From Octopus sinensis (lineage: Eukaryota): 64,000 bases of DNA. Shown one piece after another: positions 52,722 through 61,399 of this stretch. The position numbers and the translations under genes were made by a program. The notes below the pieces were generated by a model. The model searched no databases and had not been told where the DNA came from. It saw only the letters and a list, made by a program, of their open reading frames with translations. The stretch lies in contig NC_043017.1 of assembly GCF_006345805.1 (NCBI RefSeq), positions 8,990,001 to 9,054,000 on the forward strand. The letters are read 5' to 3'. Numbering within the stretch: the first letter of the stretch is position 1; every line of letters begins with the position of its first letter.

Positions 52722-53874
52722 TGTATATATGTAGATGTATATATATGTGCGTAGGGGTAAAATGTAAAAGAATGGAGGAAATTGTACCAAATTTATTCTT
52801 TGGTTAGGACCATTTCAACTTGGTGTGAGTCAGATAAATCATTTGACATTTATTTGATAGGTTTATATCATCATCACCGTTAAACGTCCATTTTCCATGC
52901 TAGCATGGGTTGGGCGGCTCAACCGGGGTCTGGGAAGCCAGGAGGCTGCACCAGGATCCAGTCTGATCTGGCAGTGTTTCTACATTGGATGCCCTTCCTA
53001 ATGCCAACCACTCCGTGAGTGTAGTGGGTACTTTTTACGTGCCACCAGCACAGGAGTCAGAGGAGGTTGGCCACGATCGGTCGGTGCTTTATACGGGCCA
53101 CAAGAGGGAAAGCAATTTCCTTGACCTGTTATAGGGATCTCCAAGACTGGTGGGAAGGACAGAGGAAGGTATCATTAAATGGGAAACCTGACCCAAATGC
53201 TTGAAACGAAATGGCACCCTAGATGCCCTATGGTGGTGCTAGATGGAGGAATGGGTGATGCCAACCACCAAGGTACCAAGCTAGCCATAATGGGATTTTG
53301 TCTTAGTGAAGCAGAGGCTGAATAAATACCACAAGGCATTCAGTCCCATGTTCTTAAAGTTCTATAAATCACTTGTCTTTGATTGATAGCTTTTTTTATT
53401 TGACCCCATAATGATGGAAGACTAAGTTGACCTCTGCTGGATTTGAATTTAAGAGCGTAAAGAGTAGGCAAACGGTAATGCTTCAAATCATTTTGTCCCA
53501 AGTCCTGTTTGACTCTTTTAATACTGACATGCCTGAACAACTCCTCCCTTCATTGGTTTCATGGAGCTTCCCCAGCCCTTGTCAGATGTGATTAAGTTGT
53601 TTAAAAAAAAGGTAGGAAAGAGTATGTTAAACCTACTTTAGTTAATTATTTTCCTTTTCTTTTTTGTTCATTTTTAAGATAATATTTTTACTTTATTTTT
53701 TAAAAATATTATTTAATAGCTATTTTGTTGTGGCTTTGTAGTTTAATTAAACTTAAATAAAAATATTACATATTGAAATCTCAATAATATCAGGTTTCAG
53801 TTGAGCCTCTGAAATACTCTCTTAGTTCTAATTTTGGTTCTAAATACTGTTTTTTTTTTTTCCAATCAACGAAC

Positions 53875-54049
53875 CCCGCACTTCAACAATGTGACCCCCG
53901 AGAAGATACCTCTTCAAGGGTTCACTATATAAAACATTAGAGACAGTTTTGTAGCTGGTTCTATTTGTGAAAGTGTGGGACAGTAATGTGTGTGATGCAG
54001 GACTTGGGGCAGTAACGCTGACCTCGAGTAGTTTAGTCACAGTACATGG
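53875..54049 (+). ncRNA. Box H/ACA RNA copy 1 (putative scaRNA, U1 pseudouridine-6 guide)
   Basis: Basal stem cccgcactt (53875-83) pairs with aagtgtggg (53971-79). H box ACAGTA at 53980-85. The 3' hairpin has lower stem tgtgat/gtcaca and upper stem acttgggg/cctcgagt. ACA at 54044-46 lies 14 nt from the pocket top, and similarity to the paralogues stops about 3 nt later. Confidence 0.75.
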
Positions 54050-54294
54050 CTTTATATATTTGAGGGAGATTTGGTTGCTATTTCTAGCAATGTTTTCTTG
54101 TTGCTTTATTCATTAGGTGAAGTGTTTTCGGGATATGAAATCAAAAGTAACTCTGATTTGTCAAAATCCACTCAGAAGGCTTTGGTCTTCTATAGTAGAA
54201 GACACTTGCCCAAGGTTCCACACAATTGGACTGAACCTGGCACCATGTGGTTCGTAAGCAAGCTACTTACCACATAGCCACTCCTACGCCTATA

Positions 54295-54340
<46 letters not shown>

Positions 54341-54360
54341 TATATATATGTATATATATG

Positions 54361-54825
54361 TATGAGGCATCTGATGTAGTATGCAAGAGAGATGTCATGT
54401 GATGCAAATGGATGAGGACAGCTGCATAAAGACGAGCTGATCTCTAACTGTGGAGGGAACCTGTGGAAGACATGGGACAAGGTGGTGAAGCATGATCTTC
54501 GAATGTCCCCCCCCCCCCGGCAATGACAAGAGACCTTTGGTAATATGCTGTGCTTGAAAAGACCTGTCAAGCTATGTAAAATTGCACTCGTGGCCAACGC
54601 TGGTGTCATGTAACTGGCTTCCATACCAGTGGCATGTAAAAAGCTCCCATTACTCTCTGGGAGTGGTTGGCATTAGGAAGGGCATCCGGCCATAGAATCC
54701 ATGCTATATCAGACTGAAATTTGGTGCAGGTCCCCAGCTTACCAGTTTTCAGTCAAACCATCTAACCCATGCCAGCATGGAAAAACGGACGTCAAATGAT
54801 GATGATGATGATTATGATGATGATC
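54361..54825 (+). mobile_element. RTE-type LINE 3' end between H/ACA copies 1 and 2
   Basis: GIxCSMQER...HVMQMDEDSCIK...SLTVEGTCGR, then the 3'UTR and (gat)n tail. Confidence 0.75.
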
Positions 54826-55384
54826 ATGTGTGTTTCAAAATTTCACAAATTCAAGAAGGGCATATATCATCATCATTACAGTTGACAGAAATCTGGACCA
54901 GTGTGGGGTCATTTGGTGGAAGGTAGAAACTGTTTAATGAAGTGGAATAAATTAGCTTGTGAGAAGGAAGAGGGGAAGTGTAACATTTAGGGTAGTAATT
55001 ACTCTTTTCCTTCGTTAAAGAGAAATGAAATGCTATACAGGGAAGGGGAGTGGGTGGGCTCCTTGTTGTTGCTTCGGTACAGGTAAGTCATGCCTGAGCA
55101 AAAGCTACGACCTTCCTTCCTTATTCCAGCTGTCTCCAATCTGTCTTCTGTTCAGACATAATGTATCTAGAATTACAGTTGTATTTTTTTTTGTGTTTTC
55201 AGTGTAATCTTCCTTTCTTAAGAGAGTCAGGTGTGATTAGAGGTAGATTTAGTTATTTGTAGCAGTTTCCCCTCATTGACTTGTTGGACTAGGTGTGCTT
55301 AAGATGTTATCAAGAGTATCCATTGCATGTTAAACTGCTTTTGTAATGTTGTTCGGTAATTTATTTGCAAAAATCGAGCAGTAA

Positions 55385-55549
55385 TCCACGCCGTGTACCC
55401 TGTTAGGGTCACTTAACAGGGGGAATTAAATCTAGATTAGAACCAGTTTTGTAGCTGGTCCGATCTGTGAAAGTGTGGGACAGTAAATTGTGTGACGCGG
55501 TACTTGGGGCAGTAACTCTGATCTCGAGTAGTAGAGTCACAGTACATAC
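55385..55549 (+). ncRNA. Box H/ACA RNA copy 2 (putative scaRNA paralogue with altered pocket)
   Basis: ccacgc pairs with gtgtgg. H box ACAGTA at 55480-85. Stems tgtgac/gtcaca and tacttggg/ctcgagta. ACA at 55544-46. The core is colinear with copy 1 at an offset of exactly 1500 bp. Confidence 0.75.
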
Positions 55550-56067
55550 ACAGTTTTATCTTTTTGAGGAAGATTTGGTTGCTATTTCTAGCAGGACCTT
55601 TTCTACTATCTACTCACACACACACACACACACATGCACATGGCAGGCTTTCACACAGTTTCCATCTACCAAAATCACTAACAAGGAATTGATTGGCCCA
55701 GGGCTATAGTGGAAGATGCTTGTCTATGGTGCTGCACTGTGGTACTAAACGCAGAATCATGGATTGTAAAATGGGCTTTGTAACCCTACAGCCATGTTTC
55801 TGCCTGTATGTTTGTATCTATATTGAATAACACACATCAAAGTTTCATAGCCTGTGTTATATGGGATTTGAGTTGGGTCTCAGAAAGTATCTTATCTAAA
55901 TTAACTATTGCTTAACCATTTTCTCACACCTTCTCCGATGAGAGGACATAAGGAATATTCTGGAAACAGTTGTAAGACCTATTTATAAATGTTCCAAAAT
56001 CTTCACAGCCTTGGTTTTTTTTTATCTCATTCTGAAAAAATAAATTATATATATATATATATATATA

Positions 56068-56467
56068 GGCGCAGGAGTGGCTGTGTGGTAAGTAGCTTGC
56101 TAACCAACCACATGGTTCTGGGTTCACTCCCACTGCGTGGCATCTTGGGCAAGTGTCTTCTGCTATAGCCCCGGGCCAACCAATGCCTTGTGAGTGGATT
56201 TGGTAGACAGAAACTGAAAGAAGCCTGTCGTATATATGCATATATATATGTATGTGTTTGTGTGTCTGTGTTTATCCCCCTAGCATTGCTTGACAACCGA
56301 TGCTGGTGTGTTTATGTCCCCGTCACTTAGCGGTTCGGCAAAAGAGACCGATAGAATAAGTACTGGGCTTACAAAGAATAAGTCCCGGGGTCGACTTGCT
56401 CGACTAAAGGCGGTGCTCCAGCATGGCCGCAGTCAAATGACTGAAACAAGTAAAAGAGTAAAAGAGT
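56068..56467 (+). mobile_element. Young full-length SINE family A between H/ACA copies 2 and 3
   Basis: Starts ggcgcaggagtggctgtgtggtaagtagc and ends aagtaaaagagtaaaagagt. Inserted after (TA)n. Confidence 0.85.
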
Positions 56468-56613
56468 ATATATATGTTTTTGTTTTCATTTTTCATTGTG
56501 TTCAAGGTTTTTTTGGTGTCCTGTACCCATATATGCATGTATATATATACATATAGATGTAGGTATGTACATATATGTATGTATATATGCATATGTTTAT
56601 ATATTATTTATGT

Positions 56614-56651
<38 letters not shown>

Positions 56652-57631
56652 AGGATTGAAGTGGCATTTGAACATTCATAATAGAATGGGAAATGTAGCC
56701 AACAATCAAATGAGACTTTATTACTGCAGTGTGTGTGTGATCAGCTCTTCAAATGTGTTTCAGGGCTGATAAGTCATTTAAGATCTCTGGCTAGGAAAGA
56801 GCTATTATAGGTACAAGAAGAGGTCAATCTCTGCAAGGAGCACTCAACCCACCGCACACAGATATATATATATCACCTGTGTTTTTATATTTTTTGTAGA
56901 ATTAAACAGGACTCTAATGATATATATATATATATATCATCACATTTGTCAAAAATCTAGGCTACATTAGTTCAAATGTGCTGGGTCATTTGGTGGATGA
57001 TGGAAAGATTTAATCATGTGGAATAAATTGGTTTGTGAGGGGGGGGGGAAGAGAAGTGTAACATTTAGGGCATTAATTACTGTTTTGCCTCATTAAAGAG
57101 AAATGAAATAGTATATGGTCTTGTTATTGTTATTGTTGAGGTTAGGTAGCTATGACTGAGTAAAATTTTGATCTGCCATTGCAGCCAGCTCTTGTTCAGA
57201 CATAATGTAGTTTGAATGAGTATTTTTTAGTGTAACTTTTTAAAGTCAGTAGGAAGTGATTTGAGGAAGATTTAGCTGTTGTTTCTAGCCGGTTTTCCCA
57301 TAGACTTGTCAGACAAAGTGTTTCTAACACATCGAGTCAAAAGGATACGTTGTAAATTCATCCATTAGCATTGAGATTACTCTGTCAAATGTAATTGTTT
57401 GGCTTAACGATGCATTTATCTCAAAGCTTCAAGATTTCAGTGATGTGATTGTTGATCGACATTGTAGGGTAGGTGCGAGAGGCCAGATTTGGCTGGTTTA
57501 AAAATAAAACAAGTTGAACATTTTGGGTCGGATTTGGCCAGTTTAAATGCTAAAGGGTTAAACGAATTTTTTAATGTTTTTGTTGTTGTTGATGATGGTC
57601 TTTGAAAAAAACAAAAAAAAAACATCCGTAA

Positions 57632-57866
57632 TCCACACTGTCTCCTATTAAGTTATCTTCATAGGGGACACTGTTTCCCCTGTTAAGGTTACTCAACAGG
57701 GCTCACACTCTGTATTTTGTCAAGTTACCTTAACAGGGGAAACTAAACCTAAACTGAGGACAGTTTTGTAGCTGGTTCCTTCTGTGGAAGTGTGGGACAG
57801 TAAAGATTGTGACACAGGACTTGGGGCAACGAGTCTGCTACCGAGTAGTATAGTCACAATACATCG
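57632..57866 (+). ncRNA. Box H/ACA RNA copy 3 (putative scaRNA, best U1 pseudouridine-6 match)
   Basis: tccacact pairs with agtgtggg. H box ACAGTA at 57797-802. Stems tgtgac/gtcaca and acttgg/ccgagt. ACA at 57861-63. Pocket strands cagg (57815-18) and agtat (57847-51) are complementary to U1 AUACU-[U A]-CCUG. Confidence 0.8.
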
Positions 57867-60424
57867 CTTCCTATATTTTATACACACATGCAACGTATAC
57901 ATACTTGCATACTCTCTCTTTACTCTTTTACTCTTTTACTTGTTTCAGTCATTTGACTGCAGCCATGCTGGAGCACCGCCTTTAGTCGAGCAAATCGACC
58001 CCAGGACTTATTCTTTATAAGCCCAGCACTTATTCTTTGTAAGCCCAGCACTTATTCTATCAGTCTCTTTTGCCGAACCGCTATACGCATGAATACACTC
58101 ACACACACACACACATTGAATGTTCTGTCTCATTTTGTCTTTCTTTCCCTTTTATACATTTATCAGGCTCTACACACTTTGGCTACAAATAATTATTGTA
58201 TGTTTTGTCATTTCTGAAGATAGTGTTAGTGTATGTATACGACAGAGTGTCAACAATTTAAACTGGGTATATGTAGCATCAGATGTAGTGTGCAAGAGAG
58301 AAGACTGTGCTGGTATGGCTATTTAACCCTCTCATTACTGTGTTTCTGTTGAGATGCTCTGTGTTTCTTTCAATTACTTTAAATATAACAATGAATTTAG
58401 TAAAATAACTTAATTATTCTGCTGGTCTCTTTTGCCGACCCGCTAAGTTACTGGGACACGAACATGTCAACACCAGTTGTCAAGCATTGATGGTGACAAA
58501 GACAGGCAGAAAGGCATACACATACACACATAGATATACATACATATATATGTATGAATGTATGTTGAATCCCACTGCATGGCACCTTGGGCAACCAAAG
58601 CTTTGTGATTGGATTTGGTGGACGGAAACTGAAAGAAGCCCTTTGTGTGTGTGTGTATACATACATGCAGACACACATATATACATGTATATATACGCAC
58701 ACATGCATACAACGGGCTTATATACACACACACACACACAATGAGCTTCTTCCAGTTTCTGTCTACCAGATTCACTCACAAGACTTTAGTTGGCCAAGGC
58801 TATAGTAGAAGACACTTGCCCAAGGTGCCATGCAGTAGGACTGAACCTGGAACCATGTGGTTGGGAAGTGAGCTTCTTACCGCACAACCATGCTTGCATG
58901 TATGTCCTGTGTGCGTGTGTATGTCTGTTTATCTTGTGTTACCATTGCTTAACAACTGGTGTTACTTGGTTTATGTTCCTGTCACTTAGATATCCAGCAA
59001 AATAGACCAATCGAAGAAGCGCCAATGCTTAAAAAAACAACAACAACCCAACAAATATGTACTGGGGTCAGTTTGGTTGACTACCCTTCAAGGTGGTGCT
59101 CCAGCATGGCCGCAGTCCAACAATTGGGACAAGTGAAAATGATAGAAGGTATTAAAGCTATGTTTGTGCTACTCTGCTTGTGTCTATACTTGTAGCCCTT
59201 TGTCTGTGCCTGTTTATTCGTTTTATTAATACCCTGTATCCTTTTAGTTTGCCCCACAACACTCTCGGAACAGTAAGTCACTATGTGTGTGTGTTTGCAT
59301 ATCTGTGTGTGTGTGTGTGTCTTTGATGTGCTTCTGTGTCTGTCTCTGTGTGTAGGGAAGACATTATGCTAATAAAATGGTAATATGAAGTCTTTCAAAA
59401 AGCTAATCTTTAATGTTCAACTTGGGGGTAAATGTGATATGTCCTGCGTTCTCAAATTGAGTCTACTGCGCTCGCACACTCTCTCTTTACACACACACAT
59501 GCACACTAACACAACATATACATACACATGCTTGCACATGTGTGTGTGTGTATATATATATATATACATGTGTGTATGTGTGTGTACACATAATTTTATA
59601 CATCTATATATATGTGTGTGTTTATATATATATGACCTAGAACTCTTTTCTCTTGTTTTGTGGGGAAGAAAGGGGTGAAGAGAGAGAGAGAGAGAGAGAG
59701 TAAGAGTGAAGGGTTGTCTCATGGAGGCATGGGTGGGTGCTGTACTCTGAGAATTCATGATTAGAAGAATAGATGAAGCTTAAGGGTGTGTGTATGTGTG
59801 TGTGTGTGAGGACAGGGTGTTAGTAGGACCAGGGTATTTACTTTCTACCCTTCTCTGCATCTCTCTCCTGTTATTTCTTAGCATCTCCACCTGCTGTTGG
59901 GAGAAAGTAGTAATGGTGGTGGCAGTAGGAGGAGGAGGGAGAGATGAGAGAGAGAGAGAGAGAGAGAGCAGTAAAGGGGTGGTTTTTTCCACCTTCCACC
60001 CACCTCACTTCATCTTCTAATCTCCCACTGTTGTCTCCTGGCCATCTCCCCCTCCCCTCAGTCTAAGAATTTTAATCCCCACTTCTCTCTTCTCTTCCAC
60101 CCAACTTGTCTGAAGACTTTAGGGGTCTCCTTTCACTTCTACAGGATTGGAATTGTGTAAATGGTGATGGTGGTGGTAGTAGTGGTGGTGGTGGTGGTAG
60201 TTGTGGTGGTATGTTTTGGACTTCTTAATAGGAAGCAGCTGTGTTGTCCCCCAATCCCCCCCTCACTTTATCTTTACTCTGTTTCAGTGTATCCCTGTCC
60301 CTTCTTTCACTCACAGACTCTTTCTATCTTTCTTTCTCTCTCTCCCTCACTCCACCTCATGTCTCTATGTCCCCTCCCTTGTTGAACTTAGACTCTTTTC
60401 ATCTTCTCTTCACACTTCATCTCA

Positions 60425-60462
<38 letters not shown>

Positions 60463-61399
60463 ATTTATTCCACCACTCCTTCTGCCTCTTTGTCCCCATC
60501 TCCCTTCAGTAAGTATCACTATGTGTGTGTGTGTGTGTGTGTGTCATCTTCTCACTCACACTCCCTCTAGATTTCTCTGAGACTGTGGGAAAGTTTTCTT
60601 GTCCCTGCTAACTTGTTGACTGCCACTCCCACGTGTGGTCGGTGGGTTGGGTGGTTGCTGTGTTGTGTTCAATTTCAAGACTTCAAGACACAAAGAATAC
60701 TGTTGCAACAGAACTGATGCCTGACTCTCCCCTTCTCAGCAGCAGTGAGTTACATCACACCACATCATATCATAGAAGCTGACCCCTTCTCTATTCCTAC
60801 TTGGCAACTGTCTCTTCCATAATGGCTTTCTTCTTTGCTTCTGTGACCTTTGCTTTTCTGTTTTTTTTTTTGGTTTTTTTTTTTGTAATAGCTTACTCAG
60901 GAAGGAAGTGGGCACCTGTGACCCCCTTTTTCATGAGTTGCATCACATCAGTCCCCTCAGCTGGCAAAATTAAGTTGCACCTGTATTTCAAAGGGCCAGC
61001 CTTGTCACACTCTGTGTCATGCTGAATCTTCCTAGGAACTATGCATGTCTGTGGAGCGCTCAGCCACTTAATGTTAACTTCATGAACAAGCTGTTTAGTG
61101 TGTGTGAACACACCCACTTTATTCTAGAATTGGAGACAAAAAAGAAAGATTGTGAAAGAAGCCCGTCATATATGTATGTATGTATTTGTGTGTCTGTTTT
61201 TGTCCCCCTCCCCATTGCTTGACAATCGATGTTGGTGGGTTTACATCCCTGTAACTTAGCAGTTCAGCAAAAGAGACTGATAAAATACGTACTAGGCTTA
61301 CAAAGAATAAGTCCTGGGGTTGATTTGTTTGAGTAAAGGTGGTGCTCCAGCATGGCCGCAGTCAAACGACTGAAACAAATAAAAGAATTAGCTCCATAA

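What the first reader, a model, noticed from the sequence alone, without database searches (positions are those of the whole stretch)
57815..57863. 3' pocket is complementary to the U1 snRNA 5' end at U6
Seen: in copy 3 the pocket strands are cagg (57815-18) and agtat (57847-51), with 14 nt from pocket top to ACA. Established: metazoan U1 begins AUACUUACCUG. U5 and U6 are pseudouridylated, in human by ACA47/SCARNA16 and U109/SCARNA18. Pairing agtat with AUACU and cagg with CCUG leaves U6-A7 unpaired, the canonical guide geometry with 9 of 9 pairs. Copy 1 (cagg 53998-54001, agttt 54030-34) gives 8 pairs with one U-U mismatch. Inference: a U1 pseudouridine-6 guide acting on the 5' splice-site recognition sequence.
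Basis: partly seen in the sequence, partly recalled or inferred. Interest (0 to 1): 0.8.

Follow-up and report, generated by a model that had tools for sequence, protein, structure and literature searches.

The report
Candidate U1 pseudouridine-6 guide RNA
Three tandem copies of a small RNA gene shaped like a box H/ACA pseudouridylation guide sit here, and one copy has a pocket that fits the first eleven bases of U1 spliceosomal RNA exactly; this is a plausible but untested new example of a guide type already known in humans and flies.

Summary
In copy 3, cagg (57815-18) and agtat (57847-51) line an internal loop between two stems. ACA (57861-63) lies 14 nt below the upper stem. Together the strands form 9 Watson-Crick pairs with U1 A1-U5 and C8-G11, leaving U6-A7 free.

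The element (about 57748-57866, + strand) has the hairpin, H box (ACAGUA), hairpin, ACA layout. It has two paralogues: copy 1 around 53923-54049 and copy 2 around 55423-55549. No Rfam family matches it.

In favour:
- A random pocket reaches 9 such pairs at a known snRNA pseudouridine with P about 3e-4.
- Substitutions among the copies avoid the stems (2/28 against 13/23 columns, p = 1.5e-4).
- On the branch separating copy 3 from copies 1 and 2, no guide position changed, against 7/14 other unpaired positions (p = 0.02).
- Nine pairs exceed the experimental minimum of 8.

Against:
- Nine pairs is close to that minimum.
- Copy 1 has a mismatch, and copy 2 has lost the fit.
- The Cajal-body box is only approximate.
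- I could not obtain orthologues, expression data, or this species' U1 sequence and modification state.

Verdict: probably a real H/ACA RNA family. Copy 3 is a credible U1 pseudouridine-6 guide, a new member of a known kind.

The parts
57748..57866 (+). Copy 3: the whole box H/ACA-like RNA, about 119 nt. The 5' end is uncertain and the 3' end is assumed to be ACA + 3 nt.
   Evidence: Alignment of the three copies, folds, and the covariance model built from the copies, which scores 148.6 bits here.
57748..57796 (+). Copy 3 5' hairpin. Lower stem 57748-51 / 57793-96 (4 bp, weak). Upper stem 57756-60 / 57777-81. Apical stem-loop 57761-74, invariant in all copies, with a possible enlarged loop containing gUAG. 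The 3' strand of the pocket is 57782-92.
   Evidence: Constrained fold. Column variability: apical part 0/14 variable, 3' pocket strand 2/11 variable.
57797..57802 (+). H box ACAGUA, which fits ANANNA. It is invariant in all three copies.
57806..57813 (+). Copy 3 3' hairpin, 5' strand of the lower stem. It pairs with 57853-57860.
   Evidence: In one search, helix 3 is paired in 100% of cells.
57814..57818 (+). 5' strand of the pseudouridylation pocket, a-CAGG. CAGG (57815-18) pairs with U1 C8-G11.
57819..57846 (+). Upper stem and 7-nt terminal loop ACGAGUC (57829-35). The loop contains cGAG, which resembles the Cajal-body box consensus ugAG.
   Evidence: for the fold. Consensus from PMC4041459.
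57847..57852 (+). 3' strand of the pocket, AGUAU-a. AGUAU (57847-51) pairs with U1 A1-U5.
57853..57860 (+). 3' strand of the lower stem.
57861..57863 (+). ACA box, 14 nt below the upper stem. It is invariant in all three copies.
55423..55549 (+). Copy 2. H box 55480-85, ACA 55544-46, pocket strands CGGU 55498-501 and AGUAG 55530-34. It is no longer complementary to U1, and its 5' hairpin can close on itself.
53923..54049 (+). Copy 1. H box 53980-85, ACA 54044-46, pocket CAGG 53998-54001 and AGUUU 54030-34. It makes 8 pairs with U1 plus a U-U mismatch. Its similarity to copy 2 starts only at 53936, inside the 5' hairpin, and runs 45 nt past ACA, so it looks like a partial DNA-level duplicate.
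54906..55088 (+). Conserved block X of the duplicated unit upstream of copy 2 (54906-55037), followed by a splice-donor-like CAG|GTAAGT at 55080-88. It may be an exon of a non-coding host gene.
56983..57146 (+). Block X of the unit upstream of copy 3 (56983-57115, 81% identical to the other), followed by GAG|GTTAGG at 57138.

Best explanation
The locus holds three tandem paralogues of a box H/ACA guide RNA on the + strand. They are probably processed from introns of a repetitive non-coding host transcript. Copy 3 (about 57748-57866) would assemble with the dyskerin/Cbf5 pseudouridine synthase complex (inferred). The pocket of its 3' hairpin would pair with U1 snRNA, AGUAU with A1-U5 and CAGG with C8-G11. 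That places U6 unpaired at the foot of the upper stem, 14 nt above the ACA box, where the synthase would convert it to pseudouridine. The inferred ancestor of the three copies carried the same pocket. Copy 1 has since acquired one mismatch and is borderline. Copy 2 has acquired three changes and has lost or changed its target. The better conserved 5' hairpin pocket probably has a separate target, possibly in 28S rRNA. Shown here: the sequence, the fold, the spacing, the complementarity, the substitution pattern and the chance estimates. Inferred: expression, protein binding, catalysis on U1 and location in the nucleus.
For: The architecture is hairpin, ACAGUA, hairpin, ACA, with both boxes invariant in the three copies. 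The 3' hairpins fold better than shuffles on the + strand (z = -3.1, -2.6, -3.6). On the - strand, copies 1 and 2 do not (z = -0.03 and -0.44), which fits the conserved G-U pairs. Among the copies, 2 of 28 paired columns of the 3' hairpin vary against 13 of 23 unpaired columns (Fisher p = 1.5e-4). Both paired changes keep the pair. The pocket makes 9 of 9 Watson-Crick pairs with U1 around U6, and this is the only G-U-free match of 9 bp or more among five snRNAs and three complete eukaryotic rRNA sets. A random pocket does as well at a known snRNA pseudouridine with P = 2.6e-4. On the branch between copy 3 and copies 1+2, 0 of 9 guide positions changed against 7 of 14 other unpaired positions of the same hairpin (p = 0.019). 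Parsimony therefore gives the ancestor the perfect U1 pocket. Eight base pairs are the experimental minimum, and the pairs flanking the unpaired dinucleotide matter near that minimum (PMC6049503). Copy 3 has 9 pairs with both flanking pairs intact. U1 positions 5 and 6 are pseudouridines guided by H/ACA RNAs in human (PMC7960923). A Drosophila intronic H/ACA scaRNA, pugU1-6, modifies U1 position 6 in an oocyte nuclear extract (PMC3884663). AUACUUACCUG is the consensus U1 5' end far beyond animals (PMC3033335). The terminal loop of copy 3 contains cGAG, close to the Cajal-body box ugAG.
Against: Nine base pairs is only one above the minimum, and most natural yeast guides form more than 10. The match was found after the fact. 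The pocket differs in all three copies, with 4 of 9 guide columns varying. No Rfam H/ACA or scaRNA family matches, even at E <= 10 on 191 nt. The Cajal-body box is not the consensus, and copies 1 and 2 have none in the 3' loop. The 5' hairpin has a weak 4-bp lower stem in copy 3 and none in copy 2 when the pocket is held open. Three sequences give almost no covariation (1 pair). I obtained no orthologue, no transcript, no U1 gene of this species and no modification map.
Confidence: 0.5

Rival explanations
1. This is a genuine H/ACA snoRNA family whose selected job is rRNA modification through the 5' hairpin pocket. The 3' pocket is an orphan that drifts, and its fit to U1 in copy 3 is a coincidence.
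For: The best conserved unpaired stretch of the RNA is the 3' strand of the 5' pocket with the H box (2 variable columns in 21), not the 3' pocket. That 5' pocket can pair with the universally conserved 28S segment GAGACAGG-UU-AGUUUUAC: 5+5 bp with one G-U in copy 3, and 5+5 in copy 2. An alternative register in copy 2 places the next U (6+4 bp). That next U is the equivalent of yeast pseudouridine 2975, as checked by eight modification anchors. The 3' pockets of copies 1 and 2 have no recurrent rRNA target and no good U1 fit.
Against: The 28S fit needs an unpaired G next to the upper stem. In copy 3 it points to the U before the known pseudouridine. Over the 25 registers tried it is near chance level by my rough estimate. 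It does not explain why 0 of 9 U1-complementary positions changed on the long branch while half of the neighbouring unpaired positions did, nor the 2.6e-4 chance of the U1 fit. The two functions are also compatible, since Drosophila pugU1-6 has both a U1 and a 28S pocket.
Confidence: 0.25
2. The copies are dead or never-expressed duplicates: snoRNA-derived pseudogenes or a locally duplicated hairpin-forming repeat in a repeat-rich region. They have no guide function today.
For: The region is full of dispersed repeats and microsatellites. The copies arose by DNA-level segmental duplication of units of about 2 kb, not as separate genes. Copy 1 lacks the homologous 5' part of the 5' hairpin. No expression evidence is available. 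Rfam has no match.
Against: Substitutions avoid the stems and both boxes (p = 1.5e-4). G-U pairs make the fold strand-specific. The flanks of the duplicated unit are only about 69% identical, while the RNA and block X are about 80%.
Confidence: 0.15
3. The 3' pocket of copy 3 guides a pseudouridine in 18S rRNA, at the second U of CAUAUGCU-U-GUCUCAA near the 5' end, rather than in U1.
For: This is the only rRNA site that recurs among 120 eukaryotic rDNA loci with 9 bp or more: 6+3 bp including two G-U pairs, in 25 or more loci.
Against: A match of that quality (two or fewer G-U pairs) is expected for 14% of random pockets. Only 3 bp form on one side. From memory, the known pseudouridines in this stretch are two and four positions downstream, not at this U.
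Confidence: 0.05

Closest known systems
Drosophila scaRNA pugU1-6 (Deryusheva and Gall 2013, PMC3884663)
   Same: It is an invertebrate box H/ACA RNA whose pocket places U1 U6. It is intron-encoded and also carries a second specificity for 28S rRNA, as the 5' pocket here may. Its activity on U1 was shown in Xenopus oocyte nuclear extract.
   Different: It lies in an intron of a protein-coding gene, whereas no coding host is visible here. It is a single gene rather than three diverging tandem copies, and its Cajal-body location is demonstrated.
Human U109 / SCARNA18 (U1 pseudouridine 6) and ACA47 / SCARNA16 (U1 pseudouridine 5)
   Same: Same class (box H/ACA) and same target region, the 5' splice-site-recognition sequence of U1 (PMC7960923).
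   Different: No Rfam covariance model, which would include the vertebrate families, matches the copies at gathering score or at E <= 10. The resemblance is therefore in function, not detectable homology.
Yeast snR42, guide for 25S pseudouridine 2975
   Same: The 5' pocket of the copies can pair around the same universally conserved GGUUAG site next to the peptidyl-transferase centre.
   Different: In copy 3 the canonical register points to U2974, not U2975. Only copy 2 reaches 2975 with enough pairs (6+4), and copy 1 less well (6+2), both in a register 17 nt from the H box. The match is statistically weak, and snR42 itself was not compared.

Membership tests
Box H/ACA guide RNA | Hairpin, hinge, hairpin, tail secondary structure | tested here: met
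   The 3' hairpin is clear in all copies. The 5' hairpin is present in copies 3 and 1 but has a weak lower stem, and it is doubtful in copy 2.
Box H/ACA guide RNA | H box ANANNA in the hinge | tested here: met
   ACAGUA at 57797-802, 55480-85 and 53980-85, invariant.
Box H/ACA guide RNA | ACA box three nucleotides from the mature 3' end | not testable with these tools
   ACA is present and invariant (57861-63), and similarity between copy 3 and the others ends just after it. The mature 3' end is not mapped.
Box H/ACA guide RNA | Internal loop (pocket) whose top lies 14-16 nt from the H or ACA box | tested here: met
   14 nt for the 3' pocket and 15-16 nt for the 5' pocket.
Box H/ACA guide RNA | Association with dyskerin/Cbf5, Nop10, Nhp2 and Gar1, and accumulation as a stable RNA of about 130 nt | not testable with these tools
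   No expression or binding data were available.
U1 pseudouridine-6 guide (functional class) | At least 8 bp with U1 on both sides of an unpaired U6-A7, with both flanking pairs intact | tested here: met
   Copy 3 makes 5+4 Watson-Crick pairs, above the threshold from PMC6049503. Copy 1 makes 8 pairs with an internal mismatch and is borderline. Copy 2 does not meet the criterion.
U1 pseudouridine-6 guide (functional class) | The species' U1 begins AUACUUACCUG and carries pseudouridine at position 6 | not testable with these tools
   There is no U1 gene in the window. The consensus is very widely conserved (PMC3033335), but the species' own sequence and modification state are unknown.
U1 pseudouridine-6 guide (functional class) | Pocket conserved in orthologues | not testable with these tools
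   No related locus was found: spurious-ORF protein search, metagenome scan, prokaryote genome scan. Among the paralogues the pocket is not conserved, but it is unchanged on the copy 3 branch.
Small Cajal-body-specific RNA (scaRNA) | CAB box (consensus ugAG, G4 indispensable) in a terminal loop | tested here: inconclusive
   The 3' loop of copy 3, ACGAGUC, contains cGAG. The invariant 5' apical loop contains gUAG only if two weak pairs open. The 3' loops of copies 1 and 2 (AAC, UAACU) have none. Consensus.
Small Cajal-body-specific RNA (scaRNA) | Localisation in Cajal bodies and binding of WDR79/TCAB1 | not testable with these tools
   This needs FISH or co-immunoprecipitation.
Rfam H/ACA and scaRNA families, including those for the vertebrate U1 guides | Covariance-model match at or near the gathering score | tested here: not met
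   There is no match over the copies at gathering score, at E <= 10 over 6 kb or at E <= 10 over 191 nt.

The most novel reading that the evidence does not exclude
A lineage-specific, tandemly amplified H/ACA RNA with two specificities. One pocket would be aimed at the 28S GGUUAG site beside the peptidyl-transferase centre. The other would be aimed at the U1 5' end. The duplicated copies would be actively re-aiming the second pocket: copy 2 changed 3 of 9 guide positions and none of 14 neighbouring unpaired positions. Alternatively, the single pocket of copy 3 might place both U5 and U6 of U1 through alternative pairings, as shown for other consecutive pseudouridines in PMC8763049.
Probability: 0.15. 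Interest if true: 0.5.

Novelty: new member of a known kind. Interest (0 to 1): 0.3.

Why it matters
Pseudouridines 5 and 6 of U1 lie in the sequence that reads 5' splice sites. Their guides are known in human and were tested in Drosophila, but as far as I could find not in molluscs; no paper in the library links octopus to such guides. If the source is a cephalopod, as the repeat content suggests to me from memory, a validated guide would extend the catalogue to another phylum. It would also give a covariance-model seed for a family absent from Rfam. The three copies offer a small natural experiment on how duplicated guide pockets decay or change target. It would not change how the system is understood.

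Tried and rejected
- Rfam at gathering score, at E <= 10 over 53000-59000 and over 57690-57880 found nothing on the copies. The only hits were microsatellite-driven sub-threshold microRNA matches elsewhere. One multi-locus Rfam call failed internally.
- A protein search with an alignment of the spurious minus-strand ORFs that overlap the three copies, meant to catch the same ORFs in other assemblies, found nothing.
- Exact-pattern scans for the conserved core found nothing in metagenome contigs or in prokaryote genome contigs.
- A covariance model built from the three copies found no further copy in the window.
- Pfam on ten long ORFs found no coding domain, so no host gene or organism was identified.
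- Papers on human U109 and ACA47 (PMC1316117, PMC480876) are not held, so the known guide-U1 duplexes could not be compared base by base.
- The 5.8S site UUGCAGAA-UU-CAGU (8+4 bp, three G-U pairs, 5' pocket of copy 3) was set aside. It needs a non-canonical register, and from memory the sequence is not conserved in animals.
- Block X as a second structured RNA was set aside: the consensus fold is only -8.6 kcal/mol.
- A third block X upstream of copy 1 was not found above shuffled background.

Full report
**What is in the sequence**

Positions 57815-57818 read cagg, 57847-57851 read agtat and 57861-57863 read ACA.

The fold of 57803-57866 on the + strand (-20.6 kcal/mol, z = -3.1) has these parts:
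- a lower stem, 57806-13 with 57853-60;
- an open internal loop whose strands are a-CAGG and AGUAU-a;
- an upper stem that begins with a57819:t57846;
- a 7-nt loop, ACGAGUC.

Fourteen nucleotides separate the upper stem from ACA.

A script that applies the H/ACA pairing rule confirms 5+4 Watson-Crick pairs with U1 around U6. Under that rule the 5' side of the substrate pairs with the 3' strand of the pocket. The target U and the next base stay free, and the 3' side of the substrate pairs with the 5' strand of the pocket.

**The element as a whole**

The stretch belongs to a repeat with three copies on the + strand, at about 53923-54049, 55423-55549 and 57740-57866. There are no further copies in the window, either by pattern search or by a covariance model built from the three.

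Each copy has this layout:
- a 5' hairpin;
- an invariant ACAGUA, which fits the H box pattern ANANNA;
- a short hinge;
- the 3' hairpin described above;
- an invariant ACA.

The 3' hairpins of all three copies fold better than shuffled sequence on the + strand (z = -3.1, -2.6, -3.6). On the - strand, copies 1 and 2 do not (z = -0.03 and -0.44). That is expected from the conserved G-U pairs and fixes the transcribed strand.

The 5' hairpin is less tidy. Its lower stem is 4 bp in copy 3. Copy 1 uses a different upstream strand. Copy 2 has no lower stem when the pocket is held open.

**Setting**

The window is a repeat-rich eukaryotic sequence with no recognisable coding ORF. Its dispersed repeats look cephalopod-like to me, but that is from memory and was not tested.

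Copies 2 and 3 sit at the end of homologous units of about 0.8 kb or more, which are about 69% identical. Each unit contains a better conserved block X (54906-55037 and 56983-57115, 81% identical). In unit 2, block X is followed by CAG|GTAAGT at 55080. This pattern suggests a non-coding host gene with one guide RNA per intron, but I have no transcript evidence.

Copy 1 resembles copy 2 only from 53936, inside the 5' hairpin, to 45 nt past ACA. It is therefore a partial DNA-level duplicate.

**Evidence of constraint**

Three sequences give almost no covariation: one compensated pair. The placement of substitutions is more informative.
- In the 3' hairpin, 2 of 28 paired columns vary, and both changes keep the pair. 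In contrast, 13 of 23 unpaired columns vary (Fisher p = 1.5e-4).
- Copies 1 and 2 are sisters (86% identical) and copy 3 is the outgroup (76-78%).
- On the branch that separates copy 3 from the other two, none of the 9 U1-complementary positions changed. Seven of the 14 other unpaired positions of the same hairpin did (p = 0.019).
- At each of the four variable guide columns, copy 3 agrees with one of the other copies. Parsimony therefore gives the common ancestor the perfect U1 pocket. Copy 1 later changed one position and copy 2 changed three.
- Copy 2 changed 3 of 9 guide positions and none of the 14 others (p = 0.047). That is either loss or re-aiming of the pocket.

**Chance**

The bare motif CAGG, gap, AGTAT, gap, ACA occurs three times in the window against 2.4 expected. 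The letters alone carry no weight.

Given the hairpin, the picture differs:
- A random 5+6-nt pocket reaches 9 or more uninterrupted Watson-Crick pairs at one of 24 known snRNA pseudouridine sites with P = 2.6e-4.
- It does so at any U of one complete rRNA set plus five snRNAs with P = 0.009.
- If up to two G-U pairs are allowed, P = 0.14.

With six pockets in the family and some freedom of register, the after-the-fact probability is of the order of 0.002-0.01.

**Other possible targets of the 3' pocket**

I had no rRNA of the source species. I therefore fetched 120 eukaryotic rDNA loci from metagenomes with a conserved 18S 3'-end pattern. Three complete units were annotated with Rfam.

For the 3' pocket of copy 3, the only recurrent rRNA candidate is near the 5' end of 18S, CAUAUGCU-UG-UCUCAA. 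It forms 6+3 pairs including two G-U pairs, a quality expected for 14% of random pockets.

The 3' pockets of copies 1 and 2 have no recurrent rRNA candidate.

**The 5' pocket**

The best conserved unpaired segment of the RNA is the 3' strand of the 5' pocket together with the H box: 2 variable columns in 21.

In one register this pocket pairs with the universally conserved 28S segment ACAGG-UU-AGUUU. The fit is 5+5 bp with one G-U in copy 3, and 5+5 bp with three G-U pairs in copy 2. A neighbouring register in copy 2 places the second U (6+4 bp).

I counted from the A-loop in real sequences and checked the count against eight yeast modification sites listed in PMC8307265. By that count the second U is the equivalent of yeast pseudouridine 2975, which is guided by snR42, and the first U is 2974.

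This fit needs an unpaired G beside the upper stem. By my estimate it is near chance level over the 25 registers tried. I record it as a lead, not a finding.

A two-target RNA would have a precedent. Drosophila pugU1-6 modifies U1 position 6 and also a 28S site in test systems.

**Comparison with what is known**

- Human U1 carries pseudouridines 5 and 6, guided by ACA47 and U109 (PMC7960923).
- Drosophila pugU1-6 is an intronic H/ACA scaRNA shown to modify U1 position 6 in oocyte nuclear extract (PMC3884663).
- The minimum guide-substrate pairing is 8 bp, and the two pairs flanking the unpaired dinucleotide become essential near that minimum (PMC6049503).

Against that rule the copies fare as follows:
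- Copy 3 has 9 bp with both flanking pairs intact.
- Copy 1 has 8 pairs split by a U-U mismatch.
- Copy 2 has a mismatch at the flanking position and fewer than 8 pairs.

Only five nucleotides precede U6 in U1, so any guide for this site has a short 5-bp arm on that side. Copy 3 uses all five.

The Cajal-body box consensus is ugAG in a terminal loop (PMC4041459). Copy 3 has cGAG in its 3' loop. All copies have gUAG in the invariant 5' apical loop if two weak pairs open. The 3' loops of copies 1 and 2 have no such motif. This point stays inconclusive.

No Rfam family matches the copies. Membership of the vertebrate U1-guide families is therefore not supported, while the functional resemblance stands.

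**Verdict**

The element is very probably a real box H/ACA RNA family, at about 0.8.

Copy 3 is a credible U1 pseudouridine-6 guide, at about 0.5 for the full statement. Copy 1 is doubtful and copy 2 is not a U1 guide.

What is missing cannot be obtained with these tools: orthologues, transcripts, and the species' U1 sequence and modification map.

This is a new member of a known kind and of moderate interest.

Noticed in passing
window 54906-55037 and 56983-57115: A block about 130 nt long is conserved at 81% inside the duplicated units upstream of copies 2 and 3, against about 69% for the rest of the unit. It is followed by splice-donor-like CAG|GTAAGT at 55080 and GAG|GTTAGG at 57138. It may be an exon of a non-coding snoRNA host gene. 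Its consensus fold is weak (-8.6 kcal/mol), and no third copy lies upstream of copy 1.
   Followed up: partly
window 57748-57796 (and 55431-55479, 53925-53979): The 5' hairpin pocket of the copies can pair with the universally conserved 28S segment GAGACAGG-UU-AGUUUUAC beside the peptidyl-transferase centre. The canonical register in copy 3 points to the equivalent of yeast U2974. A neighbouring register in copy 2 (6+4 bp), and less well in copy 1, points to the known pseudouridine 2975.
   Followed up: partly
window 55398-55421; 57676-57700 and 57727-57743: Palindromic CCCTGTTA...TAACAGGG hairpins lie immediately upstream of copies 2 and 3. In copy 2 the stem is a perfect 10 bp. In copy 3 the palindrome appears split or duplicated. 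They could be remnants of a small inverted-repeat element or part of the precursor.
   Followed up: no
window 56284-56457, 61213-61386, 59090-59138, 57932-58083 (inverted): Several copies of a dispersed repeat containing GGTGCTCCAGCATGGCCGCAGTC occur here. One is inserted in inverted orientation about 60 nt downstream of copy 3, where similarity to the other units ends.
   Followed up: no
window 58609-58775: A long inverted repeat flanks a TG/TA microsatellite. It gives sub-threshold Rfam matches to mir-5014 on both strands (51.8 and 47.1 bits, against a gathering score of 101). It is most likely two inverted repeat copies and not a microRNA.
   Followed up: no
window 55498-55501 and 55530-55534: Copy 2 changed three of the nine U1-complementary positions but none of 14 other unpaired positions of the same hairpin (p = 0.047). 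No conserved rRNA or snRNA target was found for the new pocket.
   Followed up: partly
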